A stretch of 64,000 nt of DNA from Haliotis rufescens. Its lineage: Eukaryota. Both the position numbers and the translations under genes were made by a program. Where the stretch lies: positions 1,860,001 to 1,924,000 of the forward strand of contig NW_025964334.1 of the NCBI RefSeq assembly GCF_023055435.1, read 5' to 3'. The notes under the pieces are model-generated. The model made no database searches and was not told where the DNA came from. It saw only the letters and a list, made by a program, of their open reading frames with translations. Position 1 is the first letter of the stretch. Each line of letters opens with the position of its first letter. Of the stretch, positions 2,659-62,727 are shown piece by piece.

Positions 2659-2740
2659 AGTAGTTAGAGTGGTCGCTCGTCATGCTGTAGGCTTCAGTTC
2701 CATTCCACACATGGGTACAATGTATAAAGCTCATTGCTGG
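2646..2740 (+). mobile_element. 5' part of tRNA-derived SINE (family A), continuous with the last minisatellite unit
   Basis: GGTGGGGTAGCCCAGTAGTTAGAGTGGTCGCTCGTCATGC...CACATGGGTACAATGT matches the SINE A head at 18044, 47362 and 63018, and the reverse complement of the 53746-53911 copy. Confidence 0.8.
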
Positions 2741-3050
2741 TAATTTTCAAAATACATACTCCTTGTAAAGGAGAATGTTGAAAATACATTCCAAACATCT
2801 CTAGCAATATGTCCAATGTTTTTTTAGTTTTAAGATGAGGTTGTAGAGAAGACTGTTCACAAAAATGTAACGTGGCACAGAATATTTCAAACTTTTGAAA
2901 ATTATTTTATTTGGTAGCTAGGGCTTTTGAATACATGTTCCATGAAAATGATATTGACATCATCGATAGTTTTAGAGCATTAAGAGTTAATAGTTCAGTG
3001 CTAACAGCTGAAAGGACGATGACCCATGACATTAGCTACATTGACTTTGC

Positions 3051-3210
3051 TGAGTGAGCGGTGGGATGAGTTTTACGCCGCATTTAGCAATATTCCAGCA
3101 ATATCACGGCAGGGAACACCAGAAATGGGCTTTACACAAGGCTCCCATGTGGAGAATCGAACCTAGATCTTCGGCGTTACGAGCGACCACTTTAACTCTT
3201 GGCTACCCAA
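3051..3210 (-). mobile_element. tRNA-derived SINE family A with (ACTC)n tail
   Basis: Reverse complement of the family A consensus: A/B boxes, GCTGGAATATTGCTAAA..GCGGCGTAAAAC, ACTC tail. Confidence 0.85.
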
Positions 3211-4399
3211 CTTTGCTGCAATGAGTCATGCCATGCCACTGTGGTGTTTGTAATAGTTCAGTTAAAAGTCTGCGGGGACAGGGGGTATGTGGGTGATTGA
3301 ATACGTAATGCATCCATTTCTTATTCTGCCTAAAAATGTCTGACAATTCATTTTTTGCACATGCCTTTTACACATTGTTGTTAGTTGTTCCGCTTTATTT
3401 TTAACGAAACCCCAATAAAATTAATAAAATGTGTTGGAGCTTATTCTTCAGGGTTCCAACGAAGTAAGTACGAGAGGTAGCCATATATGTGACAAAACAA
3501 TAGTAAAACATACAAAAGAGGAACTGGTAAACAATAATGCATTCGAACGAATATTATTTTTGGCTTCTAAATTTGTCTGTGATTCATATAACAATTTGAA
3601 TAACTTTATTTTCAATTGCATAAAACATGTCATTGAAAATGAATTGAAACCAATATTGTACATGCTGTGTGTTGATTAAATATTTCGGGCAAATTTTGTT
3701 TTTGTTTTAATATAATCTGACAAACAAAGAGTTTGCCGCTGTGTTCATGCATCGAATCAAACGTTTTTTGGGTTGTTTTCGTTGAAGTCAAATAAAGATG
3801 GTATATTAAATAAATTCTCCAGACCCAAAACATCTTTAATGAAGCTTTTCTCAATTCAGGTTGAGAGGAAGGAATTTGAAAATTGATATTACTGTAATAG
3901 GTGTGCCTCGCATGAGGCGGCCCTGTGATGGCGTAGTTCACAAGCCTTGTGGTGTATAAAGTTTGAACCCACTGTTGACTCGCAGCCTTTTGTGTTGTAT
4001 TCTTTCAGATGGTATTGTGTGGTCTTAGGGAGGAGACTAACATCACTAGTGGCTAAAATCCCGGCCTTGAATCCAGCCTGCCTCAGTTTCCCGAACTAAA
4101 CTTAGCACCAGAGGTATTCGGGGAACCTAATTTAGCAAGATATGGACACTTATCCCTAGTCTGTCGTACAGACCCTGAAACAAAAATATCCAATACAGCC
4201 CATGCAAGTCTATAGTGGGCAAGTCTTGATTGCTGCAGTATCAAATAGTCTCTGGGCTCCTTTTTAATATATTTTATTAAGACAATTGAACAACTGTTAT
4301 TTCTGTAAAATATGTTCATTTCAGAGACCAGATTTTAGCCTTACTTATCCCTTGAATGGCATGGATCCTTGTGTTCTGGGCTTCCTGCTTGTCCCAGTA

Positions 4400-11700: not shown

Positions 11701-14700
11701 TATTTATTGGAAATCAATCTTGTTTGAGAATTTGTGCATACTGCTTTTTGAGTATTATAATTAATAGGTAGTATGCTGGATTACAAAAATATTGGCAGAC
11801 TGAGGCTAATAACCCAACTAAAAGTCTTGAAAATGACACATGAAAAGGCCTTGAATTTTCATGTTCCATATCTGTATGAACCGTGCATTACAGATGAAGC
11901 AAAGGTGATGAAGAGCCAAAGTGAATATTTCTCATTAATCACACATTTTTGTGATGTTTAAGTGGAGGTTTTTCATGGTGTTCATGTTTGTAGATCCCTG
12001 TTGAAGATAAGAATGCTCAGGAGGAAGAGGTTGAGGAAGAGCCAACGTACTGCGAGGTGTGCGGCCGTTGTGACCGGGAGGACAGACTACTGCTGTGTGA
12101 TGGCTGTGATCTGGGGTGGGTGCTGGCTCACATCCTGTAGGGCGTCACTGGTTGGGTGGGTGCTGGCTCACATCCTGTAGGGCGTCACTGGTGGGGTGGG
12201 TGCTGGCTCACATCCTGATGGGGGTCACTGGTGGGGTGGGTGCTGGCTCACATCCTGTAGGGCGTCACTGGTGGGGTGGGTGCTGGCTCACATCCTGATG
12301 GGGCGTCACTGGTGGGGTGGTGCTGGCTCACATCCTGTAGGGCGTCACTGGTGGGGTGGGTGCTGGCTCACATCCTGTAGGGCGTCACTCGTGGGGTGGG
12401 TGCTGGCTCACATCCTGTAGGGCGTCACTGGTGGGGTGGGTGCTGGCTCACATCCTGTAGGGCGTCACTGATGGGGTGGTGCTGGCTCACATCCTGTAGG
12501 GGGGTCACTGGTTGGGTGGGTGCTGGCTCACATCCTGTAGGGGTCACTGGTGGGGTGGTGCTGGCTCACATCCTGTGGGGGGTCACTGGTGGGGTGGGTG
12601 GTGTCTCACATCCTGTGGGGGATCACTGGTGGGGTGGGGTGGGGTGGGTGGTGTCTCACATCCTGTGGGGGGTCACTGGTGGGGTGGGGTGGGTGGTGTC
12701 TCACATCCTGTAGGGCGTCACTGGTGGGGTGGTGCTGGCTCAAATCCTGTAGGGGGGTCACTGGTGGGGTGGGTGCTGGCTCACATCCTGTAGGGGTCAC
12801 TGGTGGGGTGGTGCTGGCTCACATCCTGTGGGGGATCACTGGTGGGGTGGGGTGGGTGGTGTCTCACATCCTGTAGGGGGTCACTGGTGGGGTTGGGTGG
12901 TGTCTCACATCCTGTGGGGGGTCACTGGTGGGGTGGGTGGTGTCTCACATCCTGTAGGGGGTCACTGGTGGGGTGGGTGGTGTCTCACATCCTGTAGGGG
13001 GTCACTGGTGGGGTGGGTGGGTGGTGGCTCACATCCTGTAGGGGTTCACTGGTGGGGTTGGGTGGGTGGTGTCTCACATCCTGTGGGGAATCACTGGTGG
13101 GGTAAAACTGGAAGTGGAAGAAAATGTCACTAGTTCCAGAATTGTAATAGTTCCAGAATTGTAATAGCCTTGGACTCGCCGACTTGTGTTTATTGAAGTG
13201 GTTATTGTGTTGCAGGTTTCACTGTGAGTGTCTGTCGCCACCTCTGGCCGACATCCCTGTAGAGGAGTGGTTCTGTTCCGACTGTGCCGCAGCCAACAAG
13301 GAAGGTAAAGGTCACCTAGCTGTTTCTGATTGGTCATTTTCATTTATTGAGGAAGGATATATTTTACCTTATGAAAATGGTATATATTTTTTATTAGCCT
13401 GTTAGTAATCCAGATTGGCAGGCATGAACGAGATAAATGGATGACATGAGATAACAGTGCCTCACGTTCACTGTACATGGTCAACTAACGTGAGGTTAAA
13501 AAGTGTGACTGGTGAGTGTATGTGTGTGTGTAGCTCTTACTGTCAACCATGCGTTTGTCTTATCCTGACTTAACTACATCCATGATGTGTTGTAGTCTTC
13601 TAGACAATATACTAGCCGCTGCTTGTCATAAGAGGCGAGTCAGTGGATCGAGAAGTCACACTCAGTGACTTTGTTGATTGCGTATCATTTCCCAATTGCC
13701 TGGACAGAGCTCCAGATAAGCTGCGTATCTGTGTGAAATACGCATCAGAAATGCAGATCTACGCAGTAAAATATAATCCAAGTGTATCAAATACGCAACG
13801 AACATTACAGATACGCTACAAAAATAAAATTTGTGTGTATCATCAAAATATTGTGAAGTAACCCTGCGTATTCGATCAGCAAATCAGCAACTTATTTTGA
13901 AATTATAAACGGGCATTCCGTCAACCTTGCCAAACTCCACGATGACAGTCACATCATGATCATTTGCCATCACACTTTCGTGTGGAAGTATCGTGGTATT
14001 TTTGAGTCCTATAAAGCTCTCGAACCCACACGACTCCAGTTTGCAGGGACTAGATGAATAGTGTTTTTAAATATTTAACTTAAATACCCACATGTGTAAA
14101 AACTAGTGGGTAACAGAAATTTGAATACGCAGATAGAATTACTGATACCCATTGATTTTAAAATGCATGGGTAAAATACCCACAACACCAAAAGCTTATC
14201 TGGAGCTCTGATGGATCAATGCTAATCACTGGTTTGTCTGATCCATACTTGCCTGTTAACAGATCATTGCCATATCACTGGACGCTTGCTAAGCAGGACA
14301 TTACACACGCACACACACACACACTCTGACTGTTTTGTTGATGGTGTAGGTGCAGTTGAAGAAAGTGAAGAGGAAGATATTGACATCCGCCCCCGACGCC
14401 GTCTCATTGCTCGTACTCTAGTTAGTGAAAGAGTGCGGACGCGGATCAGGCAGACCCGTGTCGAGAGGGCATTACGGCTGCCACCCGAACTCGTTTCCTC
14501 ATCTGAGGTAAGAACGAGATTGAAGTCATGTTCTTCATACATGTTCGATCAATAAACTATTTTCTTGGTAGTTTTAGTGTTGCAGCAAACCTGACAATTC
14601 AGTGATGTCATGTTTTGGACACAACTGCTGATATACAAATGATATCAAGTGGCAGAAATTAATTGTTGAGCCCTGGAATTTAATGTTTTTGTGTTGAATC

Positions 14701-17700: not shown

Positions 17701-20700
17701 TGCGGCATTAAACAACAAACAAACAAACAAAGCATGTCATCATATTCCAACGGTGTTGAATATTGCTCATTGTATGAATCACTGGTTTTCTTGGTGCACA
17801 CATGATTAATATTCTGGGATGGAAATAAGCTAGCTTGGATGAGTTTTGTTGATGGTATCTGTAAGGCTAGTAGAGTCTTCCTGTATGTTGTCAATATTCA
17901 GGCTGGTGGATGTACTTGGTTAGTTGCCATCCCTTTTGTTCACAAGCAATGTGATGTGGCTGAAATATTGCAGACCGCAGTGTAATACAACAAACAAGAT
18001 CCTCCCTAGGGTACATGAATAGTTATCCATTCTCCTTGACAAAGGGGGCGGTGGGGTAGCCTAGTGGTTAAAGCATCCACTCATCATGCCTGGGTTCGAT
18101 TCCCAACAAAGTGTAAAGCCCATATTTTTAAACTTATCCTATCTCACACTATGCATTTCTTCTTATTCTTTGATCTTGGTGTGGAAACGTCCTAGAACAG
18201 AGTTTCCAGCTTCAAAACACCCCTCACCGAAACACATCCCATACATCACCAAATCACCACTGTGATCATGGTTCACGCACCACTAAAATCCCGTGCAACA
18301 CGACCCCAGCGACCTGAGGTTTAAGAAGAAATGCATAGTTTGAGATAGGATAAGTATATAAATATACAAATTTATTAGAACATTTACAATTCCGGTGTTC
18401 CCCACCTTGAAATTGCTGGAATATTGCTATAAAAAATGGCGTAAAACTATACTCACTCACTCACTCACTCAACCACTCAACCACTCAACCACTCACTCAC
18501 TCACTCACATCATGACAAGGTGTCATATGTATTGTTTCAGTATGGGTTGTCTAAACAAATGTCACCGTAACTTTGTTTAACTCTCCAACTGATGATCTTG
18601 ATGTCTTTGCCAGAGTGTCAACCCCGTCCACCCTCGTGGTCGAGCCAGCAGCAGCAACCAGCTCCACCTTCGACATCCTCGGCTGCATCATGCAGAGTCA
18701 GAGCATCCTCAACATGAAGAGCGGGGATGTCACGATAAAGAGAGACGGTAGGTCCAGCCATCGGATTTCATGCTTGTCTTGAGACCAAGACTACTAATTA
18801 GTGCTGAGGTCAAGTAATAGTCCCTAATGACTAGTTTGAGGCTATGATACTGGACAGTTCTCAATGCTGTGATTTTAGTCAGTCAAGCAGGACTAGCTAC
18901 AAACTCAGAAGGATTAGTGCCATGAGTTAACAATAGTCCTCTGGACTTATCTTTAAAGAAATTAATGATCACAATATCTGTCATTATGGATGCACGGACA
19001 AATATTTAAATAGCAATTTTAAGTAATGTCATGACATGTACAGACTTTTATTACCTCCCCCTGGGGATTAGATTTTGGTTGGCCTAGCCAATTATTGTTC
19101 ATATCTTGTTCATCTATTCAATTTAGATTCTTAACAGATCTCATGTTGAACTATAATGTTCATGGTTGACTTTAACCATCTCATTAATTGGCGAGACCTT
19201 TACAACTAGATCATTAGATGTATTTGATCCCATATTGGTGGAGTGTATCTCATTAATTGGCGAGACCTTTACAACTAGATCATGTAGATGTATTTGATCC
19301 CATATTGCTGGAGTGTGTCTGTATTTCAAGTCACATGTGATTTGCCCTGATGAAATCTTCTTTTGTTTGTTTCTTCTCAGGTTCTCTCGTTGCAAACAAG
19401 CCAGTCCCAAAGGCAGACGTTCATCTGAAACATAGCAACACATTTGAGTTGAACACATTCTCAAAGGAGAAGGAAGTTGATGAGTACGACCCGTCTAATC
19501 CCACAGATGAAGATGCAGCTGATGTTCTGTCCTCGAAGCAAGGCCAACTGGCTCCAGCAGCCTCAATTGGCTTTGACTACGACCCATTTGAACCCACAGA
19601 TGACTCGCCAAGCAAACCTGAGACTGTGTATGATCCTTCCTTTCCTACAAACGAGGACGCAGATATGGGAGAAGATGGCGCCAAGGACAGTGAAAATGAG
19701 ACGGATACTGTTGTGAAAGATATTGAGGATAAGACTGAGCAAGATGATGAATGTTCTAATCTGGACGGGGAAGAGGTGCAGGAGTCGGAGAAAACAGATG
19801 ACGATTGTGTGAAAGAAGATGCATCAGAACCGGACTCCATTCCAGGCATCAAGAGCCAAAGTGATATTTTTGAGGCCAGTAGTGAGATTACATCTGAAGA
19901 TTCCAAGGTGTGTACTGAAGCAAAGGGGGGCGAATGTGATGTTGGGTCTCCGAGTGAAGTGATGGAGTACGCCCTGGACGATACCTCCATGGACTCTGAA
20001 AAACCTCTGCAGATTGATGAAGGTGGAGAAGACGAAGACAGTCAGAAGGCAGAGGATGGAGCTGAAGAGACTCTTGCAGAAGAGGAAGTAGAAGAAACGG
20101 AAACAAATTCTCAAGATGCCAATGAGGGACAGGAGGAAGAGGTTGAGGAAGAAGTCGAGGAAGAAGTTGCCGAGAATGAGGAAGTTGCCGAGAATGAAGA
20201 AGTTACTGAGAATGAAGAAGTTGCTGAGAATGAGGAAGTTGCTGAAAATGAGGAAGTTGCTGAAAATGAGGAAGGAGAAGAGGTGGAGGACGAGGATGGT
20301 GAGGAAGAAGAAGTGGAGGAGGAGGAGGAGGTTGAAGTGGAGGAGGAGGAGGAGGAAGAAGAAGAAGAACAGGAGGAAGAGGAGCAAGAGGCAGGGGGTG
20401 ATGAAGAAGGTGAGATTGAGGAAGAGGTTCAAGCTCGGACAATGGGGTCACATCTAGGGGGATGGGACACAGATGATTCTGACTATGAAATTACCCGAGA
20501 ACAGGAAAACAAGGTGCCCATTTCAGAGTTTCCACGTATTCCTAAGAAGAGGAGTTACAGGAATAAGGATGCTGCTGATGATTTAAGGACAGTGTTGCAA
20601 CGGTTAGATGAAAAAGGCCATGGTCACCGGGCATATGAAAAGAAGGAATCTGTTCATAAGAGTAAAAGAGACTCTGACTCCAAAGATAGGACTTCTAAGT

Positions 20701-23700
20701 ATGATAAGAGGGAAAGAGACTATGAAAGAAGGGATAAAGATAGACGTGATGATCGAGAAGAACGATCACGTGATAAGCATAGCAGAAAAGAACTGTCACG
20801 AGGTGAATATGAAAGTTCGTCTCGGCATAAACGAAGGAAAGACACTAGATCTAGAAGTAGGTCCCGAGAGAGAAAGGATAGCTCTGGGTCACATGACCGT
20901 AGAAGGTCAAGATCACGTGAAAGGTCATCTCGCAAAAAGCGTAGAGAACGGTCATATTCTCGTGAAAGATCTTATGAAAGAGAAAAATCGCACAAGAAAA
21001 AGAGGCGTGATCGTGATCGTAGCCGGGATCGTAGCATTGAACATAGAGGTCGTAGAAGTCGTTCTCGATCTCACAGTCCTAGAAAATATTCTGAAAGAGA
21101 CAGTTATTCTAAACAAAATCGTGATAGTGAAAGATCGTATAAAAGAAAGAGTGACAGGGAAGATTCAAGGAGTGAGTACAAGAAGATTCGATCTGGAGAT
21201 GAGGCTGAAAAGGAAACTACCAAGTATTCCTCAGTGAAAGTTAATCACAGTGCACCCAAATTAGTGCCTGTTTCTTTCACGGATGACCCAATAGTTCTTA
21301 GTGATGATGAGGAGGAGCAGGACCATGAAAATATACCTCTGCCATCCTTCGGGCCAAGTGGAAGTGCAAAGTCCGATTTGGCAAAGAAAAGTGAAAATCT
21401 GGACATCAAAGGTGATAAGCCTGATGCTAAAAGTGATAAGTCAGACAGCAAAAGTGAAAGGGCTAAGAGTGACAAATCAGCAAGTAAGAATGAAAAGCCT
21501 AAATCAGAGAGTGAAAAACATGTCCGTCTTCAGTTGAAGTCGTTTGCCACTAAGAAAGTGTCGGAGCATTTGATTAAGCAGGGTGGTATATTCGGGAAGG
21601 AGCCGTCTGTGTACGACCCCGCTCACCCGACCGATGAGGAACAGGAGACCGAGAAGGGAATCTCAGTGGACTTTCAAGGTGCTGTGCCCAACAGTGCGTC
21701 ACCCGACCTTCCGCCACAGCTCATGCAAAATGCTCACGGACAGGGACCTTTCATAAGTGAGAATGCATTTATTTTGACAAGTGAGCCAGGGGTTATGCAG
21801 CCACAAAATATTCCTCTGCCTGCTGTGACGTTTGGGATGCTTCATCCCCGACTCCAACCAGGCTTGCCCCAAAGACAGATTCTCATGAACCCTGTTATGT
21901 TAAATCAGCCACCTCCGTTCACACAAACCCAGCCAGGTAGATTTCCTCGTCTCCCGACTGGGGCGATGCCTCGGTTTGGCTGGCAGGTGAACCCTCCTGG
22001 CGGCATGTTGCCGCTACAGCAGAACAGATTTGGTGCTCGTATGCCTCCTGGCCCTGGCGGAATGCCCCCAGGGGGTAATGTGATGAACGGTGGCTTCGAC
22101 CCCATGGGTCCTGACCACTCGCGTCCTCCCTTCCCACCTAACATGCACCTCCCACCAGATCACAATCACCCACCTCCAGTGCAGATGAAAATGAACCAAA
22201 TTCGTCCTCTACTGCCGAACCCACTCAGACCACCCCCCGGACCACAGGCTCCAAAATCACAGCTGGAACAGTTGGAAGAGATCTCAAAATTACTAAGTGC
22301 TCAAGCCCAGCTTGCTGCTCTTGAAAAGGACAAATCTGGCCTTAATTCCCCCAGTGGGAAGGGGAACGGCATCTTTAAGGTGCCACTCCCCCCACAGCTG
22401 TTTGGCAAAGGGGCTTTACTGAAGGCGCAGGAGTCGGTGGAGACCACGGAGGTTGTGGACATGGACATGTCCCCGCTAGATGACGACTGTGAGCTGGAGC
22501 TGCCCACCCCGCCCGACTGCATGAACACCGACCCAGATGAAAAACCCAAGAAAAGGACAGTTGACTTGAAAACTTTTAAGAAAACCGTCCAGGAGCTGTC
22601 TTCAACTCAGGATGACCAACCGTCGTCAGCTGCGGACCTCACAAACAAGGACAAGGTACGACTGAATGAGGTTAGGATATGCTTAATAATATAACTTAAA
22701 AAAACAATTTAAGTCATTGATTTTAAAAAGTAATCAAATAATGAACACACATTTTTAAAATCATTAATTTAGGCAATTTTTTCTCTGTATTCTCTTATAC
22801 TCTTAAATGTTATTTTACAACACAAACACGACAAGGAAACTTTGACATGGCACAATTTTAACAATGCTTTTAAAACTTTTTTCAGACTTTCTAATTGTTA
22901 TTCTCAATTTTATTATCGCTACAATTTATTAAATGGTTGGTGGGAATGGATCGCAGATTCTGTGATCTATCAGAAACCAGTCAATAATTGGAACATGTTT
23001 CAGGTAACATGTACTCATTAAGTTATGCCATCTCTGTCAGCCATATTTACTGATCTATGAGACAATATGCAGCAATCATCATGTGCAAACATAAGAAAGT
23101 TACTGCCCACATGGATAGGTAATAACTGTTAACTCCCTTGGATTAACATATCTATTGCCACCCACCTATTCTAAACATAATTTAGTTTTCAGACAAGTTA
23201 TAAATGTGATAAACATGAACTTATCAAAGTGTAACGATTGGTCATTAAGGTCGTTCAGGTTGCCATGGCTACAGTAAATACAATCATGTTTGTTGTGGAA
23301 CTGAGGGAAATATGATGTGAAGCTTGACCTGACCTGACTGATGTTCTACCTGTTTTATTCCAATGCATTGTCTAGGCCCAGTGCAGGGATGAGTTCTCTC
23401 CATTATCGTTGGTTCCTGAAAATTATTGACGGCTGCTGCTTGGACATTTTCAGAAACCATTTGTCATGTTTGTGATGTTTTTGCTTACCTATGTTATTTA
23501 ACCCTGAAGGAAAACTTTCACAAATTATTGAAACAAAAAAGATTTGGGTAAGAATTGGCCTCATGCTTGTTGTTAGAGGCAACTCACAGGATCGGGTGGT
23601 CAGGTGCTCACTGACTTGGTGGATGCATGTCACCCTATCCCAGTTGAGTAAATCAGTGCTCATGATGTCAGTCGCTAGATTGTCTGGTCCAGATTCAATT

Positions 23701-52986: not shown

Positions 52987-55367
52987 TTAGCCTTTGCCCT
53001 TGCTTCGCTTGCTGTTATCCTTGCATTTGCATTTCTTCATTAAGCTGCGGAAAATATTCTTTCTTTTGGATCCTTTGGAGACATTGACCTTCTGATCAAT
53101 CAGCTCATTCTTTTCCTCTTTCTCATCTGGGAACACAAAATTCAGTTTGTTAGGAAAACGCGAATAAAACAGTATTCACTCAGTTGGTTGCTTTGAACAT
53201 CTTTCAAGCTGTAACCGGAGACATGGAATGAACAGTTATTCTACCATGATCAGGACATGTTTGAGTGTGCAAGTGATTATTGCTTAACGCCGCATCAACA
53301 ATCTTGCACCTATACGCGGACACGGACCTGGGGTAGAATGTGTCCCCGGCACCCCATTGCTAGCCGTAAGACTACATTGAGAACCCTTGGTGATTCTGGA
53401 TAGATTGACAACACTCTATTGCTTGTCCTAAGAGGCGACTAAATGGATCGGGTGGTCAGGCTCGGTGACTTGGTTGATTGCATGTCAGTATCCCAAATGT
53501 GTGTATCAACGATTCTCATGATGGCAGTCACTGAATTGTCTGGCCAAAACACTATTATTTACAAATCGTGGTTATATAACTGGAATATTATTAAGTGTGG
53601 CATCATACAACAGACAAATCACAAACATATATTATCAATATTAGAAAAGGTACCTTACAACCCTAACAGACTGTCTCGGTCGTCCAGAGCGTCCCCCCGG
53701 AGAGCGGAGGGTCGTAGGTTCGATCCGGGCGCGTCATACCAAAGAGTTAGTGAGTGAGTATGGTTATACGCCGCTTTTAGCAATATTCCAGCAATATCAC
53801 GGCGGGGGACACCAGAAATGGGCTTCACACATTGTACCCATGTCGGGAATCGAACCCGGGTCTTCGACGTGACGAGCGAACGCTTTAACCACTAGGCTAC
53901 CCGACCGCCCCTCATACCAAAGACGTGTAAAGAATGGTACTTGTTGTTACCCTGCCTGGCACTGACATTAAGGGGCTAAAACAAGTACTGGTCGGCTTAG
54001 AGTCAGTATGCCGTGTCTGAGTACGGTATTCATGTTAAACTGAGGCATGGTATCTCAGTGTGCTAGCACTATAAAATCGGCATTAGTCCGGACTAGTTCA
54101 AGCAGCCACACACACGTGCATGCACGTTGCATTATAAGTGCAATAATCTTGGACGCGGGGTTAAACCCCATTCCACCTCACTGCCAACCCTAGCAACCCG
54201 GGTGTTGAACCTAAATTATGGCACTCGCCTTAGTCGCCTCATATCGACTAATGCATGACCTAACTATATAACACATGCACCAGTGCAACCTATTATTGAA
54301 AAAATGCAACCTAACGTTTATGTCTACATGCACTATTAATTTATGTTTTGTTTGTTCGTTGTTTAACGCCACACTCAGCAATATTCCAGCTATATGACGG
54401 CTGTCTGTAAATAATCGAGTCTGGACCAAACAATCCAGTGGTTGGCATGTTGAGCATCAATCCACGCAATTGACATATGATGACATGCATCAACCAAGTC
54501 AGCGAGCCTGACAACCCGAACATTAACTCAGGGAGTCAACAAATCCGCTGGAAGACAACCACCTGTTTGATGGTTGAATTCACATTCAATAAAAGATCTG
54601 ATGATCCTTAAAGAGTATAAAAACCAATACAACAGAAGTTCAATTGTCATAGTCAAAACGTCAGTCCTAGTTTTAAATTCACCTTCCTAGGACTACCATT
54701 TGGCACGAACCAATAACATTCTTTGAATAAGAAGCAGACCCCCAGCCATACCTTCGGCGGTTGACAAGGCGGTGGAGTTTTCCTCTATGGTGGGACCCTC
54801 GCCTGAGGCGGGTATGTCCAGATCAAAAGCAAGTTTGGGAGAGTCCATGCCCTCCTTGGATTGTCCGATGAACATGGATGATTCACTACTGGTGAGAGAC
54901 ATCGATGACCCGCGTCTGAGAGGCAGATGTGATATGTAGCCATAAGGGTCATCCTGGAGATACTTGATCCGATCCAGCCAGTTGTCCCATTTAGAATTCC
55001 CCTCACGCACGGTGGATAACTCGAAATAGCGGGATCGAGTGTGTCTTGCGGACACTTTCAAGATAAAGTCTTCTGGCACGGTTGAGATGTCTACTGATCT
55101 GAGAGGAATGATCCACTTTAACTCCATCCCGTCAACTGCAAGGTCGACATCGACGGTAGAGGTGATGGCAGGATCTTCCTTCCAGTTGAGAATGTATCGT
55201 CTGCCGAGTAGGAGATGGTCTGGAGACAGGCCCAGCACGACCTGCTGTAGAGCATCGCCACATTTGTCCAGCTCTACAAACGTTGCCTCGAGGAGGACAA
55301 TGTCTTCAAGGTCGCTGTATTCATCCATTAGCAGCAGTTTCTGGAGAGGACCCTTGATTTGATCCAT
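52987..55367 (-). CDS. FAM71/GARIN (Golgi-associated RAB2 interactor)-like protein A, about 251 aa
   Basis: Coding exons 55367-54752 (GAAG|GTATGG, phase 1) and 53126-52987 (DEKEEKNELIDQK..KGKG*); acceptor just upstream of 55401 and a candidate non-coding exon ending at 56520 (GTAAGT). Motifs GPLQKLL..DEY, LEATFVEL...G, VVLGLSPD.LLL, MELKWIIPL.SVDIS, RYFEL, W.NW...I..L. Confidence 0.7.
53670..54183 (+). mobile_element. SINE family C with a SINE A copy (53746-53911, -) nested inside
   Basis: 12-bp TSD TCATACCAAAGA at 53734-53745 and 53912-53923; GGTTCGATCC B-box in the host head. Confidence 0.88.
54344..54520 (-). mobile_element. SINE-like family B, 3' half
   Basis: Reverse complement of the family B tail and body. 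Confidence 0.82.
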
Positions 55368-56599
55368 GGTGTTCTGTCTAGACTACTTTGTGGATAACGT
55401 CCTGGAAACACAAGGTGGTCACACAAGGTATAAACTATCTAATATAGGTCGGGGGTCACTGCTTCAAGATATATTTTTCAGAACATCCAGCCTGAGCAGC
55501 GAACAATTTATTTGGTATTCTAAATCCCAAGATATTTTGTCCAATAATTTCTGGAACATTTTTTTTATTCAAAAAACGTACACAGACGCACGCGCACACT
55601 TCTTTTTATCGAAGCAAAATAGATTGTCCCAGAAAATTCTTGACAAAATAAATATACATCAGGCTGTTGAAAAAAAGAAATTGCACAAATATTATAATGT
55701 GTTTTTCTTTGAAATAATATTGAGGCTTATACTTACATTTTAAAAAATATCTGGTTTTGCAGCTGTAGCTGGGAAAAATATCTAATCAAAGAATATAAAA
55801 TGGTCGGTCCCTAACTCTATATGTTTACGGTTCCCCCCACGAATTCGAATTAACAAGGTTTCAATGTACAGAGGTAATCAAAGTTTCCTGAGAAATCTGA
55901 GAAGAAAAATGTCATGGCATTACTTCTAAGCGGTTTCCAGGCCTTGGATGCGTTTAGCTTTATATAGTCAGTCGACTAAATGGAATTGGTGGTCAGGCTC
56001 GGTAAATAGGTTGATTGCGTGTCATCATATCCTAATTGCGTGGATGCTCATGATGTCAGTCACTGGTTTTGTCAGACCCGGACTCTATTTATTTACAGAC
56101 CGCGGCCATATAGTTGGAATATCGCTGGTCTGCGGCGTTAAACAACAAACAAATAATGTTGAGGATGAGTGAATCACGGCGAGGTATCGAACCCGGACCG
56201 GGCCTTCGGCGGGACAAGCGAACACCTTAAGTAGATTCAGTATTCTTTATCTCCAAAAAATATAAGCATCAGTTCTTTTTTCAATAGATATAATCTACGA
56301 TTAATATACAAAGATTTATCTATAATACGCGATGCACTACTTCTTCCATGGTATATCAGTAATTGCGTCATGTAAGGTTTGTTGACAAACAATAAAACTC
56401 ATCATCTGGTAGAATACTGTAATAATCAAAATTAAACAACGCGCATCTTTTTACCTGATTGTTTAAACTCGAATAGGTGTACAAGGATTCTCGGAGCCTT
56501 TTAATGTAAAACAACTTACCGAGATCTGGCAATATAAATGACTTCTGTCTCTTAGCGATGCCACCTGGACGAATGCTGCAGATGTGTGCACTCTGATTA

Positions 56600-56633
56600 T
56601 GACGTCATGTTACCACATGTATTGATGACGTCA
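56600..56633. promoter_or_regulatory. Twin palindromic CRE sites upstream of GARIN-like A
   Basis: TGACGTCA at 56600-56607 and 56626-56633. Confidence 0.6.
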
Positions 56634-56761
56634 AGATTATTGTGCTTTTTCACATCACTGAATCACTCTAATGTGTCGTCAAATTATGAGTTGATTCGTA
56701 ACCTGTGTGTTCCCGCTTCTACAATAACAGTTGGAAAGATGACTCTTGTGAATAGATACTA

Positions 56762-58176
56762 TACTGTCGGGCAAAAGAAAGTAGACACTCATCTCTGATG
56801 GTGGCGAAATACACTCTTCAAAAAAAGAAACGCATAGGTGTTTTGAGAATTCCAATTAGATTTTTTTTCCCAGCAATCGTCATAAAGACAATTCTTATGT
56901 TTGATTCCCGTTAATCATGTCATGTGTGTTGTGCATTGCGCGCAAAACACATCTCAAAATGCTTTTTGTATGCTTCAGCACAATGCATGTGCAAAGTGTT
57001 GGAAACAAGGGTAGAGACACTGACTATAAAATACCGTACAAAATTCATCAGTTCATTACGAATTTTCTGACGTGAACGGAGATCGAAAAATGCCAAGATT
57101 AACTGCAGCTGACCGAAATATCGCCATTGGACGTTTGGAACCAGGGGAGTCCCAGTCTGCCGTTGCAAGACACTTCAACGTTCACCAAAACACCATATCT
57201 CGACTATGGGATCGATATACCCACACTAATTCGATTCAAGATCATCCCAGAAGTGGAAGACCAAGAGTGACCACCCCTGCTCAGGATCGGTACATCCGGT
57301 TGCATCACCTTCGGAATCGATTTGCTACAGCAACGGACACTGCAGGACAAGTGCCTGGTATGCGAAGAATTTCCGACCAAACCATCAGAAATCATCTGAG
57401 GGAAGTGGAAATTCGAGCGAGACGACCAAAAGTTGGACCTGTCTTGCGACGTCTACACCGTCAACGACGTGTCCGGTGGTGCAACAGAGTACAGGCATGG
57501 GATCTCAGGAACTGGCGACGCGTTTGGTTCAGCGATGAGACACGTTATCTTCTTCAACGACGGGATGGAAGACAACGTGTATACCGACGTCGACATGAAC
57601 GTTTTGATCTCAACCCGATTGAACATTTGTGGAACGAACTTGATCGACGCGTCCGTCAACGTCACCAGCGTCCCCACACTGGCACAACACGCCAACGCCT
57701 TACAGGAGGAATGGCGAAGAATTCCCCACGAAAAAATCCGAAGACTTGTGCAATCTGTGCCAAGGAGGTGTCGAGCAGTGACGGCTGCAAGAGGTGGTGT
57801 GACCAGGTTCTGACCATGACGCCCCCTTGTGGCTACACATGTGCAATGACTGACCTGAATTAATGCTGACAATGACGACAATACTTTTGTCGATCACTGT
57901 GTCTAATTTAATTTGATTGTGTGTAGATACTTTTACATCCGCTTAATAAATATCCTTATTTTTTAACTATGCGTTTCTTTATTTTGAAGAGTGTATGAAA
58001 CAACCAAGAAATGGTTATTCGATGGTGATGTATTTTATACGGGTATCAGTTGTATTTTGGACCTTAAGTTTGCATCGTTTCGGCGATTGTTTTCAGCCTA
58101 CTATATTTTTAATAATGTTTGTAATTTTTTAGTCAAATCCAATTTTCAAGTGTATACTTTCTTCTGCTCGGCAGGG
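56762..58176. mobile_element. MITE hosting the Tc1 insertion
   Basis: Inverted ends CTGTCGGGCAAAAGAAAGTAGACACT / AGTGTATACTTTCTTCTGCTCGGCAG. Confidence 0.7.
56812..57993 (+). mobile_element. Internally deleted Tc1/mariner transposon
   Basis: TA-flanked TIRs CACTCTTCAAAA.AAAGAAACGCATAG; transposase MPRLT..HTH..WRRVWFSDETR joined directly to DLNPIEHLW (second catalytic Asp region missing), then a frameshift to ..ARGGVTRF. Confidence 0.93.
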
Positions 58177-59265
58177 TTTTTTCTAACGATATCATGCATT
58201 AGCAATGGATCTGAAAATCTGTTAGGGAGATTTTCACAATGATTTCCGTATGCTAACTTCAGACGTGTCTCCATGATTAAATTACTCACGTTTATTCATG
58301 GCGTTAATGAAAAACAACAGTAAATTGTAATATTTTGTAAAGAGTCTTGTGCCCAGAACGTGCACCTGCAACACAGATATGATGTGCAGCACCAGGGTTC
58401 AGACTTGTCCAGTGGATTACGAAAAATAATATTAAAGAAAACAAGTGAAAATTTAAGAATTTTAACTTTAATTCTTTAAGGGTTATCTTTGTAAAAACAC
58501 AAGACGAAAAGTGCTGAAATGTTGTATAATAGGATGATAATTTGACCCCCACTTGATCATCGGTACCTATACACTACTCTTCTCCAAATCTAAGAGGCTC
58601 AAAGAGATGACGTTTTGGTAGTAAAAGGCACAACAATGAGCTTCAGATATAATCAGGACAAATAGAATTGATTAATTTTCTTAGGATTGCAAAGAAAGTA
58701 ATTTTGTCAGAGTGGTCGAGCTGAAACGTGGTGTAGAGTATTAGGCTTATATATATATTTTTTATGCATAGGTCAACTTTGGCTAGTGAATGTGATATCA
58801 GTACGAACCTGGAATATCCCATTATCAGAAACTGCCGCATCAAATGCGCCAATACGTTTAGCAATGTTTGGTACAGTGTCGATGTCCTTTGCGTTTATGC
58901 CGTGATATGGCTGTAATATTGCTAAAAGTGGCGCAGAACCATACTCACACACTCACTCACTCTTTACATGTATGAATACGACAATTAACAGCCACATTTT
59001 CTTTACCTGACGGCGAAAGATTTCACTGCACCTCAATTTACCTGGTAAGAAACAGTTCTTTGTCGCAATTTGTTGTTATTGAAATAATAAAATATCTTCT
59101 TAGTCAACCCCCAAATTGTGTTGTTATTTTGACACGATTTTGAGACAATGTATACAGACACGATTATCAGCATGTTTTGTGGCAAGAATTGTTCACGTGA
59201 ATCTCACGGAGGTGATCATCGAACTTGGGCTTCTACGTCAACGGGAACCTTACGAGTGTAGAATA

Positions 59266-59289
59266 TGACGTCATAATGGTATGACGTCA
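59266..59289. promoter_or_regulatory. Twin palindromic CRE sites upstream of GARIN-like B
   Basis: TGACGTCA at 59266-59273 and 59282-59289. Confidence 0.6.
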
Positions 59290-59382
59290 CAATCACAGTC
59301 CATCAATAATGATTCCGGTGAGGTGACAACGTATAGCATGACCTGTAGATTCAACAAATTTACAAACAACGCAACTCGGTTC

Positions 59383-62300
59383 ATGAAACATCGCATCGGG
59401 GGACGCTCTAAGGCAGGGAAAAGGACGGGCAGAGTAGCCAAACTACTCAAGCGTGGTGACTACCCGGGGATGTCCACGGACATTGTCCTGGAAGCGCCCT
59501 GTTTCCAGCTGCGAGCGGACGGAGAGGTGGACCGCCACGTGTTTATAGGGCTGACCACAACAGATTGTGTTATGGCCGTACAGCGTCTTCCAGATTACGG
59601 GGAACATCCTGGCGTGAAGTACAGAGCGAATGTCGACCTGGATGTGGAGGGAATGGAACTCGTCTGCTCGGCTCCGCTGAGGTTTATCAGGTATAACACA
59701 ATATATGTCTGGTTAGTTTGTTTGTTTTTGTTGTTGAACACCGCACTCAGCGATATTTCAGCTATATGATGGCGGTCTGTACATAAACGAGTCTGGACCA
59801 CACGATTCAGCGGTTGACATAACGAGCATCGATCCACGCAATTGGGATACGATGGCATGCATCAACAAAGTCAACCAGTCTGATCCCGTTAGCCGCCTTT
59901 ACGACAAGCATACTCGCCTGTTTCGGCAAGCATTGGTTGCTGAAGACCTATTCTACCCCGGATCTTCACGGGTCATATGTTTGGTTGTCGTTGAACGTAG
60001 CAGTCACCAGTATCCCAGCTATATCACGGCGGTTTGTAAACAATCCAGTCTGGTAAACAAACAAACAGTGGTCCTATGTCAGTCAGAAATCAGTTAAACA
60101 GCGCTGGTGGCGAGAGTAGTTGGATGGGGGACGTGTTTGGCAGCTTGACTCCCGAGTTTCTTGGGCTCTGACCTTGCACCCCACTGACCCATTGACCGAG
60201 GTAATAATGTAGCGCCCTGAGCAAGCATGCTTAAGGGTGTGAATTTGGCGCATTGTAACATATACATCATTGATAATAAATGGAGATCTCATCAGACGTT
60301 GTCTATGAATTATGTTTATTGTTTGTGTTTGTGTACACACTTGAAAGCAGTTCTTCTGATCATACACAGAGTTTCGTCCCTTATGTGTATCAGAAACCTG
60401 GGTTCGAATCTAGACTCGCCCCAATTATGAACCTCGGTTTATCCGCACCATACCCGTGCTCGTTGTTTACCAAAGTTACGTCTTAGACCGACGCAACATC
60501 ACACAACAAGCTGACATAATCAGTGCTATAAGTGGAATACTGTTCAGAGCTGCGTACAACCAAACTCACTCACTCACTCTACTGATATATTTGTATATTT
60601 TCATATATTTCTAGGTTTTTCCTGATTGACACGCGGTCCCGGAAGTTCGCGATCTGCACAAATCTCGGCAGTGTGTGGTACTTCGAGATGTGCAACTCGG
60701 CCGATGGCTCAGACGAACTGTGGACAAACTGGCTGGAAATGATCCACGCCCAAGACCATCCCGAGTGGTTCGGATACCGGACGTGGACAGTCGGTCGGAA
60801 GGACGCCATGGACGCCAGAAAATCAACATTACCCAGAGACACCAAGGGGAAAGACGGGATCCTTAGATTCATCAAGAGACCACTTGCATTCTGTGCTGTA
60901 GATAACGTTGGCACCCAGATCCCCTTTGCGAGGCTCCATTCCAAACAGCCTGGAAGAGCATTCCGAACTTCAAACGCTGATTCTCATATGGAGAAGAATT
61001 CTCCTTTTAAACATGTCAAATTTGTAATCCCACAAGTCCGAAAGTCCCAAACAAGAACAAAGTGTGATGAGGTGCGGCAGTCCCAGTCTTCCACAAATCT
61101 TTCCGCAAATCTTTCCGCATCATACACGTGCAGAGGCAAGCGCCACGTGGTCAGGAAGAGCCAATCAGAGTGCATGCTGGGTGGCGGGTCAGGGTTCACC
61201 CCTGGCAGCGGCCTGTACTTCAAGTACACGACCCTGGCCTTCTTGAGCGAAGCTCTACGGGCTGAGCCTCACAGAGCCGTTGACATCGCCGCCATCCGTT
61301 ACCACAAGTGGGGCATCACCAAGACCTGTCTCAACCAGCTGCAGAAAGTAAATACCGTATTTCCTCTATTTAGAAATCAGTGCTTTTCATAGAGGTCGAC
61401 CTATATTTCACGACCACACCTCTAGATTCCACCTCTAAAGACCATACCTCCAGACCCAACCTCCAATAGAGATTGGCCCATACCAAAAGTCGTTAAAAGA
61501 TGGTACTTGTTGTTACCCTGCCTGGCGCTCGGCATTAAGGGGCTAAAACAAGGACTGGTCGGCTCAGAGTCAGTATAGTGTGTCTGAGTGGGGTATTCAT
61601 GTTAAACTGCAGCATGGTATCTCAGTGGGCTTGCACTATAAATCTGCATCAGAGCGGACTATTACACGGCCACACACACGTGCATGCACGTCGCTACCAG
61701 GGCAATAATCTGGGACGCGACATTAAACCCCATGTCACCTGACCTCAATTCATATACCTGATGAAACCTCACACTACTTAAAGAAATAAAAGCGACAAAA
61801 CCCTTCCCGTAGTAATACACGTTTCGATTATCTGCAGAAACAGATTCCATTGAGCGTAAAAGGTAATATTGTAATACAAAGTTTATTAATGTATATGTAT
61901 TCTAACCCGGGTCGTCTCTGTTGTTTATGTTATTTTTGTTCTGTGACCTTTGGGTGTGTTGGTTTTATGAAGATCCACCTCGTCCATACACAAGGGACAT
62001 TATAGTCTTCATGGAACGGACCTAGGTTAAATTGAACACATATAATCGACTTGTAGGCTATGTATTAATTGTTCAAATAACAAAGAACCGGTAGTGTTGC
62101 CTTTGTGTGTCAGTTCGTTGGAACTCGACTTGATTTTTATATACACTAGTCACTATGTGACTTTTGTTTCAGATTTGGAAAGCGCGGAATGAAGAGAGAT
62201 TAGCAAGAGAACGCAAGATGTAGGTAGAAGTATATCACAAACGGTCGTGTTTAAATACTAGTAATAAGAGAGATGTGACATCTTACTGATGCCTGGAATA

Positions 62301-62727
62301 AAAGGCATAGACAGTGTTTTGTTTGTTGTTTAACGCCGAACTCAGCAATATTCCAGCCATATGACGGCGGCATGCTAATAATCGAGTTTGGGCGAGACCA
62401 TCCAGTGATTGATATTGTGAGCAACGATTCACGTCGTCGGGGTACAATGACACGCAATCAACCAAGTCGCCGAGCCAGCATGGTTACTGGGGACAGATTC
62501 GAATGCAGAATCCAACAGGTGCAGGTATACCATGAAACCTTACAACACAACTCTCGATTAACTCGACTCATCAGTTTGAGATGATGTAGCTTATAATTAT
62601 ACACCATGGCCTCGTATTGGCTGTGTTGAAGTGAGTAACTTTATTGACATTTTTTTCAGGGAGCTCAATCGTGACGATTCCGATGACAGCATAACGGATT
62701 TAGTCAAAGAATTCGCTCAACCAAAAA
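59383..62727 (+). CDS. FAM71/GARIN-like protein B, paralogue of A; 3' end probably beyond the window
   Basis: Exons 59383(or 59338)-59690, 60615-61347, 62173-62219, 62660-62727 (phases 2, 0, 2, 1). GRVAKLLKRGDY, VLEAPCFQL...G, VFIGLT, VDLDVEGMELVCSAPLRFIRF, WYFEM, LWTNWLEMI align with protein A. Confidence 0.68.
59712..59974 (-). mobile_element. SINE-like family B, full length
   Basis: Reverse complement of the consensus, ending CCCCGGATCTTCACGGGTC. Confidence 0.88.
61478..61747 (+). mobile_element. SINE family C, 5'-truncated
   Basis: Near-identical to 53912-54183. Confidence 0.8.

What the first reader, a model, noticed from the sequence alone, without database searches (positions are those of the whole stretch)
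52987..62727. Divergent pair of FAM71/GARIN-like paralogues
Seen: two head-to-head genes share a ~135-aa N-terminal domain (KLL...(D/E)Y....DIV.LEA.F..L...G....V..GL...VDL.V(D/E)GMEL....PLR....YFE.....W.NWL..I). Knowledge (recalled): mammalian GARIN/FAM71 proteins read G.LQR.L..GEY..F...PMFES.FIQI...G...V.VGI..TSP...D..LLA...LELTRLLPL.FV.IS....L.LKL.TGR.FYL.L...F..W..L..L; they bind RAB2 and are testis-enriched, with roles in acrosome and sperm-head formation. Inference: a remote invertebrate branch of a family studied mainly in mammals, possibly serving acrosome biogenesis.
Basis: partly seen in the sequence, partly recalled or inferred. Interest (0 to 1): 0.8.

Follow-up and report, generated by a model that had tools for sequence, protein, structure and literature searches.

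The report
Abalone GARIN-like pair; one is RasGEF
Two neighbouring abalone genes share a PH-like domain that is a true distant relative of the RAB2-binding domain of mammalian sperm-head (GARIN/FAM71) proteins, and one of them carries it on a large Ras-activating enzyme, an arrangement found across invertebrates but not described in the papers I could search.

Summary
In Haliotis rufescens, gene A (minus strand, 52987-55367, 251 aa, LOC124149754) and gene B (plus strand, from 59281) lie head to head and share a ~140-aa N-terminal domain (BLASTP E 2e-12).

The GARIN reading is partly right. Pfam PF12480 does not hit either gene directly. However, a profile of the abalone domain finds 111 relatives among 1.84 billion proteins. 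Seven of them are vertebrate GARINs that all carry PF12480. Profile-profile comparison of mollusc A-like proteins with those GARINs gives 98.7% probability, E 4e-16, over 141 columns; reversed controls give 0.1%. AlphaFold models of abalone A and of a vertebrate GARIN show the same order of elements: an N-terminal helix, seven strands and a C-terminal helix, which is a PH-like fold.

Gene B is not a GARIN-type protein. Spliced RNA contigs join its domain exon to RasGEF exons beyond the window. Its black-abalone orthologue is 1358 aa, with RasGEF at 451-609. The same domain-plus-RasGEF layout occurs in insects, sea urchins, a hemichordate and other molluscs.

RAB2 binding, gonadal expression and any acrosome role remain untested. 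All invertebrate members I looked up are unnamed, and one paper calls the family vertebrate-only.

The parts
54752..55367 (-). Gene A exon 1 (ATG at 55367; codons 1-205 plus one base). It encodes the whole PH-like domain and most of the disordered linker.
   Evidence: ORF; GT donor read; the product is identical to P0001 / LOC124149754.
54948..55355 (-). Gene A GARIN-like PH-like domain, residues ~5-140: N-terminal helix (LQKLL..EY), seven strands, and a C-terminal helix with W127/W130.
   Evidence: AF2 pLDDT above 90 over residues 10-140; PH-domain fold hits; hhalign to vertebrate GARINs 98.7%, E 4.4e-16.
52987..53126 (-). Gene A exon 2: the last 46 codons and the stop. It encodes an acidic stretch followed by a polybasic tail with two Cys (KRKNIFRSLMKKCKCKDNSKRSKGKG).
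   Evidence: AG acceptor and reading frame read; matches the P0001 C-terminus; similar basic/Cys ends in other A-like proteins.
57072..57863 (+). Tc1/mariner-type transposase remnant in the 3.9-kb spacer between the two start codons.
   Evidence: Pfam HTH_Tnp_Tc3_2 E 6.9e-10 and HTH_38 E 4e-6; only a fragment of DDE_3 is matched.
59281..59690 (+). Gene B exon 1 (first in-frame ATG 59281; the orthologue's start equals 59338). It encodes the N-terminal two thirds of the PH-like domain, from about 59428.
   Evidence: It is 92% identical to H. cracherodii P0128 residues 1-119. By their lengths, the RNA contigs should reach into this exon; that part was outside the stretch laid.
60615..61347 (+). 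Gene B exon 2. Bases 60615-60777 complete the PH-like domain (last strands and the W.NWL helix); the rest encodes linker.
   Evidence: It is 91% identical to P0128 residues 121-360. The exon end at 61347 is confirmed by a GT..AG joint in the RNA contigs.
62173..62219 (+). Gene B exon 3 (47 nt).
   Evidence: Spliced RNA contigs in runs X1-X4: joints 61347>62173 and 62219>62660.
62660..62727 (+). Gene B exon 4 (68 nt). The gene continues outside the window, at window-equivalent 64294-64408, 64622-64751, 66528-66653, about 67852-67977, and an open frame from about 68.7 kb to 71083 that I read as the last exon.
   Evidence: Joint 62727>64294 and the following joints. Collinear RasGEF profile hits in exons 6-8. 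The orthologue P0128 reads through all these exons.

Best explanation
The two genes are old molluscan paralogues. Each begins with the same ~140-aa PH-like domain: a short N-terminal helix, a seven-stranded sandwich and a C-terminal Trp-bearing helix. This domain is homologous to the RAB2-binding domain of vertebrate GARIN/FAM71 proteins.

Gene A (251 aa) has a GARIN-like layout. The domain is followed by a disordered Ser/acidic linker and a short polybasic, Cys-containing C-terminus.

Gene B (by its orthologue about 1360 aa) carries the domain in front of a CDC25-type RasGEF domain and a long Cys/His-rich tail. It belongs to a family with the same layout in insects, echinoderms, a hemichordate and other molluscs.

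Shown: the homology, the fold, the gene structures, the transcription and splicing of B, and the RasGEF fusion.

Inferred: the domain docks onto a GTP-bound small GTPase on Golgi-derived membranes, RAB2 being the most likely partner by homology. In B this would place a Ras-family exchange factor on that membrane, giving a Rab-to-Ras relay. A would act as a membrane-tethered, domain-only adaptor or competitor for the same GTPase.
For: Paralogy.

Gene models.

Family: hmmsearch with the abalone profile against 1.84 bn proteins gives 111 hits. Of 108 hits scanned, the only recurring Pfam families are RasGEF (33 hits) and PF12480 (11 hits). No ordinary PH family appears.

GARIN link:
- Seven vertebrate hits all carry PF12480, best E 2.4e-25.
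- hhalign of A-like proteins against GARINs gives 98.7%, E 4.4e-16, 141 columns on independently built alignments.
- On domain cut-outs it gives 99.2%, E 1.7e-19. B-like against GARINs gives 97.4%, E 1.5e-11.
- Reversed controls give 0.1%.
- Hemichordate and urchin RasGEF members hit PF12480 below threshold at the matching position.
- Atlas neighbours of A, and of the N-terminal part of B's orthologue, are PF12480 clusters.

Fold: the AF2 models of A and of a vertebrate GARIN have the same element order. Both hit PH domains. For A the top hit is the Ral-GTP-binding PH domain of Exo84.

RasGEF in B: exon-wise collinear PF00617 hits. Spliced RNA contigs run from exon 2 to the RasGEF exon. The orthologues carry PF00617 at 90-94 bits.

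Age of the duplication: A and B clades both contain gastropods and bivalves and are sister groups in a FastTree tree. B exon 1 groups with the second domain of the Lottia model.
Against: - Neither abalone protein, nor B's orthologue, reaches Pfam PF12480 directly.
- RAB2 binding has been shown only for mammalian GARINs (PMC8602946, PMC11236154), which share about 25% identity with the abalone domain. Binding specificity may not be conserved.
- No tool here could model a complex.
- No REM/RasGEF_N domain was detected in B's orthologue at E<=0.1, so GEF competence is unproven.
- The tree is unrooted and was made with a fast method. The direction of change (fusion first or domain-only first) is open.
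Confidence: 0.55

Rival explanations
1. The domain is homologous to the GARIN domain, but in invertebrates it does something other than bind RAB2. It could bind another small GTPase (a Ras, Rap or Ral product or activator of the attached GEF, giving feedback as in SOS), bind lipids, or fold back to auto-inhibit the RasGEF. RAB2 binding would then be a vertebrate novelty.
For: The commonest partner of the domain is a RasGEF, not a trafficking module. The structural neighbours include PH domains that bind Ral-GTP (Exo84) and Rho-GTP (AKAP-Lbc) and PH domains next to DH exchange domains. Identity to GARINs is only about 25%. A published statement treats RAB2 binding by this family as vertebrate-restricted and Rab2B-specific (PMC6639074).
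Against: The whole domain is conserved between the invertebrate and GARIN groups, including the extra N-terminal helix LQ.LL..EY that lies outside the PH core. That argues for a shared surface. The beta1-beta2 loop of abalone A (DKCGDAL) is acidic rather than basic, which is a poor fit to phosphoinositide binding (sequence).
Confidence: 0.3
2. The likeness to GARIN is only that of any PH-like fold (convergence or very deep superfamily kinship). The genes would then be a lineage-specific PH family with no special tie to GARIN.
For: There is no direct PF12480 hit. Foldseek returns generic PH domains. No GARIN structure is solved.
Against: A database-wide hmmsearch recovers GARINs and no other annotated PH family. 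hhalign E 4e-16 against 0.5-0.8 for reversed controls. Shared signature residues lie outside the PH core.
Confidence: 0.04
3. Gene A is a decaying partial duplicate of the 5' end of gene B with no function of its own.
For: It is short, lies next to B, and has a low-complexity tail. No reads were laid on it.
Against: The two-exon frame is intact. Orthologues exist in H. rubra (83% identity), another abalone-like transcript (63%), Patella, Lottia, a scallop and Solemya. So the A clade predates the gastropod-bivalve split. Several members keep a basic/Cys C-terminus.
Confidence: 0.03

Closest known systems
Vertebrate GARIN1-6 / FAM71 (Golgi-associated RAB2 interactors; Pfam PF12480 GARIL_Rab2_bd)
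   Same: The ~140-aa domain is homologous over its whole length. The predicted element order and the PH-like fold are the same. Gene A also shares the overall layout: an N-terminal domain, then a disordered tail, with no other domain.
   Different: Identity is about 25%, and there is no direct Pfam hit. The Pfam model spans only the C-terminal half of the domain. Gene B carries a RasGEF domain, which none of the seven GARINs scanned here shows. RAB2 binding and testis expression are not shown for the abalone genes.
Unnamed invertebrate 'Ras-GEF domain-containing' proteins (for example Lottia LOTGIDRAFT_228206, Mercenaria LOC123535711, Laodelphax LSTR004225, Osmia LOC117600396, Diadema and Ptychodera proteins)
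   Same: Gene B is a member. It has the same N-terminal domain (hhalign A-like against this group E 1.6e-38) followed some 300-450 residues later by PF00617.
   Different: None of these has a described function. The mollusc B clade has a longer N-terminal extension and a Cys/His-rich tail. The Lottia model joins an A-like and a B-like domain in one protein. This may be a merged gene prediction.
Exo84 Ral-binding PH domain and AKAP-Lbc PH domain (PH domains that bind GTP-loaded small GTPases)
   Same: They are the best or good structural matches to the abalone A model (1zc3_B E 1.2e-5, TM 0.70 on the target; 6bca_A). They are a precedent for a PH fold used as a GTPase effector module.
   Different: The similarity is structural only, at 12-17% identity. 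There is no sequence-level kinship and no shared N-terminal helix signature.
RasGEFs that carry PH domains (RasGRF, SOS, RalGPS)
   Same: The architecture pairs a PH-like targeting or regulatory module with a CDC25-type exchange domain.
   Different: Here the PH-like module is of the GARIN type and sits at the extreme N-terminus. No DH domain and no REM domain was detected.

Membership tests
GARIN/FAM71 (PF12480 GARIL_Rab2_bd) | Match to the Pfam PF12480 profile at or above its gathering score (22 bits) | tested here: not met
   No hit even at E<=10 for gene A, P0001, P0003 or the gene B exons. None at E<=0.1 for B's orthologues. The model is only 71 positions long and covers the C-terminal half of the domain.
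GARIN/FAM71 (PF12480 GARIL_Rab2_bd) | Sequence homology of the whole RAB2-binding domain to bona fide GARINs | tested here: met
   hmmsearch hits to seven PF12480 proteins at E 5e-7 to 1e-3 against 1.84 bn sequences. hhalign 98.7%, E 4.4e-16 and 99.2%, E 1.7e-19. Reversed controls 0.1%.
GARIN/FAM71 (PF12480 GARIL_Rab2_bd) | Same fold as the GARIN domain | tested here: met
   Both AF2 models show an N-terminal helix, seven strands and a C-terminal helix, with core pLDDT above 90. Both retrieve the same kinds of PH domain. These are predicted structures only; no solved GARIN structure was found.
GARIN/FAM71 (PF12480 GARIL_Rab2_bd) | Binding to GTP-RAB2A/B | not testable with these tools
   No complex prediction or binding assay was available. 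Binding is known only for mouse and human proteins (PMC8602946, PMC11236154).
GARIN/FAM71 (PF12480 GARIL_Rab2_bd) | Testis-enriched expression and a role in the acrosome or sperm head | not testable with these tools
   The RNA runs are coded and give no tissue. The single reads call showed only that gene B is transcribed and spliced.
GARIN/FAM71 (PF12480 GARIL_Rab2_bd) | Architecture: N-terminal domain plus disordered tail, with no catalytic domain | tested here: inconclusive
   Met by gene A. Not met by gene B, which has a RasGEF domain.
RasGEF / CDC25-homology exchange factors (PF00617), gene B only | A CDC25-homology domain encoded in the same transcript | tested here: met
   Exons 6, 7 and 8 hit profile positions 2-27, 38-75 and 73-114 in order, at 13.7, 20.6 and 29 bits. 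Spliced RNA contigs join exon 2 to exon 7. The orthologue P0128 has PF00617 at residues 451-609, 90 bits.
RasGEF / CDC25-homology exchange factors (PF00617), gene B only | An accompanying REM (RasGEF_N) domain, and exchange activity on a Ras-family GTPase | tested here: inconclusive
   No RasGEF_N hit at E<=0.1 in three Haliotis orthologues. A divergent REM cannot be excluded. Activity is not testable here.
PH-like fold superfamily | A seven-stranded beta sandwich capped by a C-terminal helix with a conserved Trp | tested here: met
   Model elements E26-33, 39-47, 51-57, 81-88, 92-97, 102-107, 113-117 and H123-139. W127/W130 are nearly invariant. 50 PDB PH-domain hits at E<=1e-3.

The most novel reading that the evidence does not exclude
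The GARIN RAB2-binding domain began as the N-terminal targeting module of an ancient bilaterian RasGEF. In invertebrates, active Rab2 on Golgi-derived membranes (including the forming acrosome) would recruit this exchange factor and switch on a Ras-family GTPase, giving a direct Rab-to-Ras relay. Domain-only proteins would have split off repeatedly as regulators or competitors of that relay: mollusc gene A, the dipteran and lepidopteran short forms, and the vertebrate GARINs.
Probability: 0.2. Interest if true: 0.8.

Novelty: new variant of a known kind. Interest (0 to 1): 0.55.

Why it matters
GARIN/FAM71 proteins are studied only in mammals, as RAB2 partners needed for acrosome and sperm-head shaping. 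One published statement says the family exists only in vertebrates (PMC6639074).

The results here show three things:
- The RAB2-binding domain is a PH-like module.
- It has clear relatives in molluscs, insects, echinoderms and a hemichordate.
- In those animals it usually sits on a Ras-family exchange factor.

This gives the mammalian family an evolutionary context. It also shows that the Pfam model covers only half of the real domain. And it yields a concrete, testable idea: a small GTPase of the Rab2 type may recruit a RasGEF in invertebrates.

If the domain's partner is conserved, abalone, insects and sea urchins become usable systems for GARIN biology. If it is not, the comparison should show which residues make a GARIN bind RAB2.

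Tried and rejected
- Direct Pfam scans of both genes, exon by exon and on the NCBI protein, gave nothing at E<=10. So the proposed direct Pfam/InterPro-type test fails, and only profile methods show the link.
- A sequence search of the PDB with the domain profile gave only chance-level patatin hits at E 0.8. No solved relative exists by sequence.
- The word-index protein search with gene A found only Haliotis orthologues.
It was repeated with the stored identical protein.
The NCBI neighbourhood of gene A could not be read. H. rufescens' own gene B protein did not turn up in the word search, so orthologues from three other Haliotis species were used instead.
- A treekit maximum-likelihood run was lost to a naming error and replaced by a FastTree tree. 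No support values or rooting tests were made, so the order of events is left open.
- Aizawa and Fukuda 2015, the paper cited by PMC8602946 for GARI-L4 and Rab2B binding, is not held. No RAB2-contact residues could be checked.
B was searched exon by exon, and the database orthologue P0128 stood in for the whole protein.
- The idea of a compact shared bidirectional promoter was set aside. The start codons are 3.9 kb apart, with a transposase remnant between them.
Full report
**What is there**

The window comes from Haliotis rufescens, the red abalone.

Gene A is on the minus strand. An open frame starts at the ATG at 55367 and runs to a GT donor at 54751/54750. An AG acceptor before 53126 opens a second exon that ends with the stop at 52987. 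The product I read off is 251 aa. It is identical to NCBI's LOC124149754 (P0001).

Gene B is on the plus strand and starts 3.9 kb away. The first in-frame ATG is at 59281. The black-abalone orthologue starts at the Met that corresponds to 59338. Its exons in the window are 59281-59690, 60615-61347, 62173-62219 and 62660-62727. A Tc1/mariner transposase remnant lies between the two genes at 57072-57863.

**The shared domain**

- BLASTP of A against B exon 1 gives 29% identity over 92 residues, E 2e-12.
- The next 34 residues of A match the start of B exon 2 at 41% identity, E 1e-4.
- A six-frame search of the 1.33-Gb assembly finds only these two copies.

**Is it GARIN-like?**

Pfam gives nothing for either gene, even at E<=10. 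The simplest proposed test therefore fails.

I built a profile of the abalone domain from A, two orthologues and the two B exon pieces kept as separate rows. I ran this profile against 1.84 billion representative proteins and got 111 hits at E<=1e-3, 41 of them at E<=1e-10. Of 108 hits scanned with Pfam, the only recurring families were RasGEF PF00617 (33 proteins) and GARIL_Rab2_bd PF12480 (11 proteins). No ordinary PH family appeared.

Seven hits look like vertebrate GARINs. All seven carry PF12480, with a best E of 2.4e-25, and one of them is named as such by UniRef.

Profile-profile comparison gave these results:

| Comparison | Probability | E-value |
|---|---|---|
| 12 mollusc A-like proteins vs the 7 GARINs, independently aligned, 141 columns | 98.7% | 4.4e-16 |
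| Same groups, domain cut-outs | 99.2% | 1.7e-19 |
| B-like set vs the GARINs | 97.4% | 1.5e-11 |
| Either alignment reversed (control) | 0.1% | 0.5-0.8 |

The first alignment runs from the N-terminal helix to past the C-terminal helix. The shared signature includes the stretch LQ.LL..EY, which lies in front of the PH core. This argues against mere fold-level likeness.

PF12480 maps only to the C-terminal half of the domain, residues 112-181 of P0086. That probably explains why the short Pfam model misses distant members. Hemichordate and urchin members hit it below threshold at the right place.

The language-model Atlas places both A and the N-terminal part of B's orthologue next to PF12480 clusters, with scores of 0.90-0.92. 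I treat this as a lead that agrees with the other evidence, not as proof.

**Fold**

AlphaFold2 on A with the family alignment gives pLDDT above 90 for residues 10-140. The model has a helix at 7-12, seven strands and a helix at 123-139. The remaining ~110 residues are disordered.

A vertebrate GARIN (P0086) modelled in the same way shows the same order of elements.

Foldseek against the PDB returns PH domains for both models. For A the best hit is the Ral-GTP-binding PH domain of Exo84 (E 1.2e-5). The RhoA-binding PH domain of AKAP-Lbc is also listed. No relative has a solved structure by sequence.

The domain is therefore PH-like, and PH folds that bind GTP-loaded small GTPases are a known kind.

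**Gene B is a RasGEF**

- The Lottia relative (P0004, 1274 aa) contains an A-like domain, a B-like domain and a RasGEF domain. The Mercenaria B-like protein also has a RasGEF domain.
- In the abalone genome, PF00617 hits lie on the same strand 2.5-4 kb beyond the window end. tblastn with relatives marks the same exons.
- I laid four runs on window-equivalent 60901-66900. In three of them (X1-X3), one contig of 1.8-2.1 kb carries GT..AG joints 61347>62173, 62219>62660, 62727>64294, about 64408>64622 and 64751>66528. Shorter contigs in the fourth run (X4) show four of these five joints. The joints show that the runs contain RNA. They also show that the exon carrying the end of the PH-like domain is spliced through to the first strong RasGEF exon.
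- Exons 6, 7 and 8 match RasGEF profile positions 2-27, 38-75 and 73-114 in order.
- A word search with the open frame I read as the last exon found orthologues in H. cracherodii (1358 aa), H. rubra (1103 aa) and H. asinina (1326 aa), all with PF00617.
- The H. cracherodii protein is 91-92% identical to B exons 1 and 2. It reads straight across every junction I had predicted. Its RasGEF domain is at residues 451-609, 90 bits.
- No REM domain was detected.
- The last ~750 residues are Cys/His-rich and match no known family.

**The wider family**

Look-ups of representatives give the following:

| Group | Members looked up |
|---|---|
| Short A-like proteins | Patella, Lottia, a scallop, Solemya |
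| Long RasGEF forms | A planthopper, bees, a sea urchin, the hemichordate Ptychodera, Mercenaria |
| Long form, RasGEF not checked singly | A stick insect (627 aa) |
| Short domain-only forms | Mosquitoes, a hoverfly, another fly, moths |
| Both long and short isoforms | A beetle |

All are unnamed. In a FastTree tree the molluscan A and B clades are sisters, and each holds gastropods and bivalves. B exon 1 groups with the second domain of the Lottia model. The duplication is therefore old, at least as old as the gastropod-bivalve split. The tree has no rooting test, so whether the fused or the domain-only form came first stays open.

The A and B orthologues of H. rubra are reported from contigs of the same length, which points to one scaffold. 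The Lottia model suggests that the two genes are adjacent there too.

**How it most likely works**

Shown: the homology to the GARIN domain, the PH-like fold, the RasGEF fusion, and the transcription of B.

Inferred:
- The domain is an effector-type module for a GTP-bound small GTPase. RAB2 is the best guess, because that is what its only studied relatives bind (PMC8602946, PMC11236154).
- On B, this would bring a Ras-family exchange factor to Rab2-positive membranes.
- A would occupy the same site without catalysis. Its basic, Cys-bearing C-terminus recurs in several A-like proteins and could anchor it to membranes.

I put about 0.55 on this package. About 0.9 of that confidence attaches to the homology and much less to the partner. 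The main rival, at 0.3, keeps the homology but gives the domain another partner or an auto-regulatory role on the GEF.

**Comparison with what is known, and novelty**

The papers I could search treat GARINs as mammalian, testis-enriched RAB2 partners. One says the family is present only in vertebrates (PMC6639074). I found no paper on invertebrate members, on a PH-like fold for the domain, or on a RasGEF fusion. Automatic Pfam labels on some arthropod proteins do exist.

I rate this as a new variant of a known kind. The acrosome idea is neither supported nor refuted.

**Limits**

- The single reads call went to gene B, so transcription of gene A was not checked.
- Sample names are coded, so no tissue can be assigned.
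- No complex modelling was possible.

Noticed in passing
window 57072-57863 (+): A 263-aa open frame with Tc1/mariner HTH domains (HTH_Tnp_Tc3_2 E 6.9e-10) and only a scrap of the DDE domain. It is a decayed transposase sitting in the spacer between the two divergent genes.
   Followed up: partly
window 53655-53900, 54341-54523, 55948-56172, 60456-60614, 62251-62465; L005 4000-5400: Short repeated elements recur in the introns and spacer. Their frames translate to ...IAGILLKAAYNHTHSLT... and ...[10 protein letters not shown](Q/R)TN..., and one at about 53760-53900 looks tRNA-derived. In the RNA runs the matching stretches draw thousands of contigs with summed depths of 1e5, so these repeats are abundant in transcripts or in carried-over DNA.
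   Followed up: no
beyond the window: G000:C556 about 1928700-1931083 (window-equivalent 68.7-71.1 kb), L003 6648-9083: The open frame I read as gene B's last exon encodes about 750 residues rich in Cys and His (for example ...CHCETGG......CTCGEATCGHC......CHCHSRK...). It has no Pfam match. It may be a metal-binding tail. It is conserved at 87% in H. cracherodii but only 49-52% in H. rubra and H. asinina.
   Followed up: partly
P0004 (Lottia gigantea LOTGIDRAFT_228206, 1274 aa): One gene model holds an A-like domain (1-150), a B-like domain (205-385) and a RasGEF domain (602-758). Either the two genes lie in tandem on one strand in Lottia and were merged by prediction, or a two-domain form really exists. 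In Haliotis the genes are head to head, so an inversion separates the two lineages.
   Followed up: partly
P0022, P0094, P0097, P0109 (hits): Odd architectures occur elsewhere in the family. One has a rhodopsin-type 7TM receptor in front of the domain (P0022, 1653 aa). Two proteins match the profile in three separate stretches, which may be repeated or split copies (P0094, P0097). One has RasGEF before the domain rather than after it (P0109). Their source organisms were not looked up, and some may be merged gene models.
   Followed up: no
window 1-4000, 12001-14000 and 20001-22000: The composition profile shows a GC-rich, strongly G-over-C skewed stretch at 1-2000 (GC 0.63, GC skew 0.48). A second lies at 12-14 kb (GC 0.53, skew 0.28). 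An A-rich, G-rich stretch lies at 20-22 kb (AT skew 0.28). These are probably simple or satellite repeats.
   Followed up: no
P0012 / P0127 (Agrilus planipennis LOC108740412): The same beetle gene is annotated with a 683-aa isoform and a 323-aa isoform that keeps the N-terminal domain. Domain-only forms may therefore also arise by alternative splicing rather than by gene duplication.
   Followed up: no
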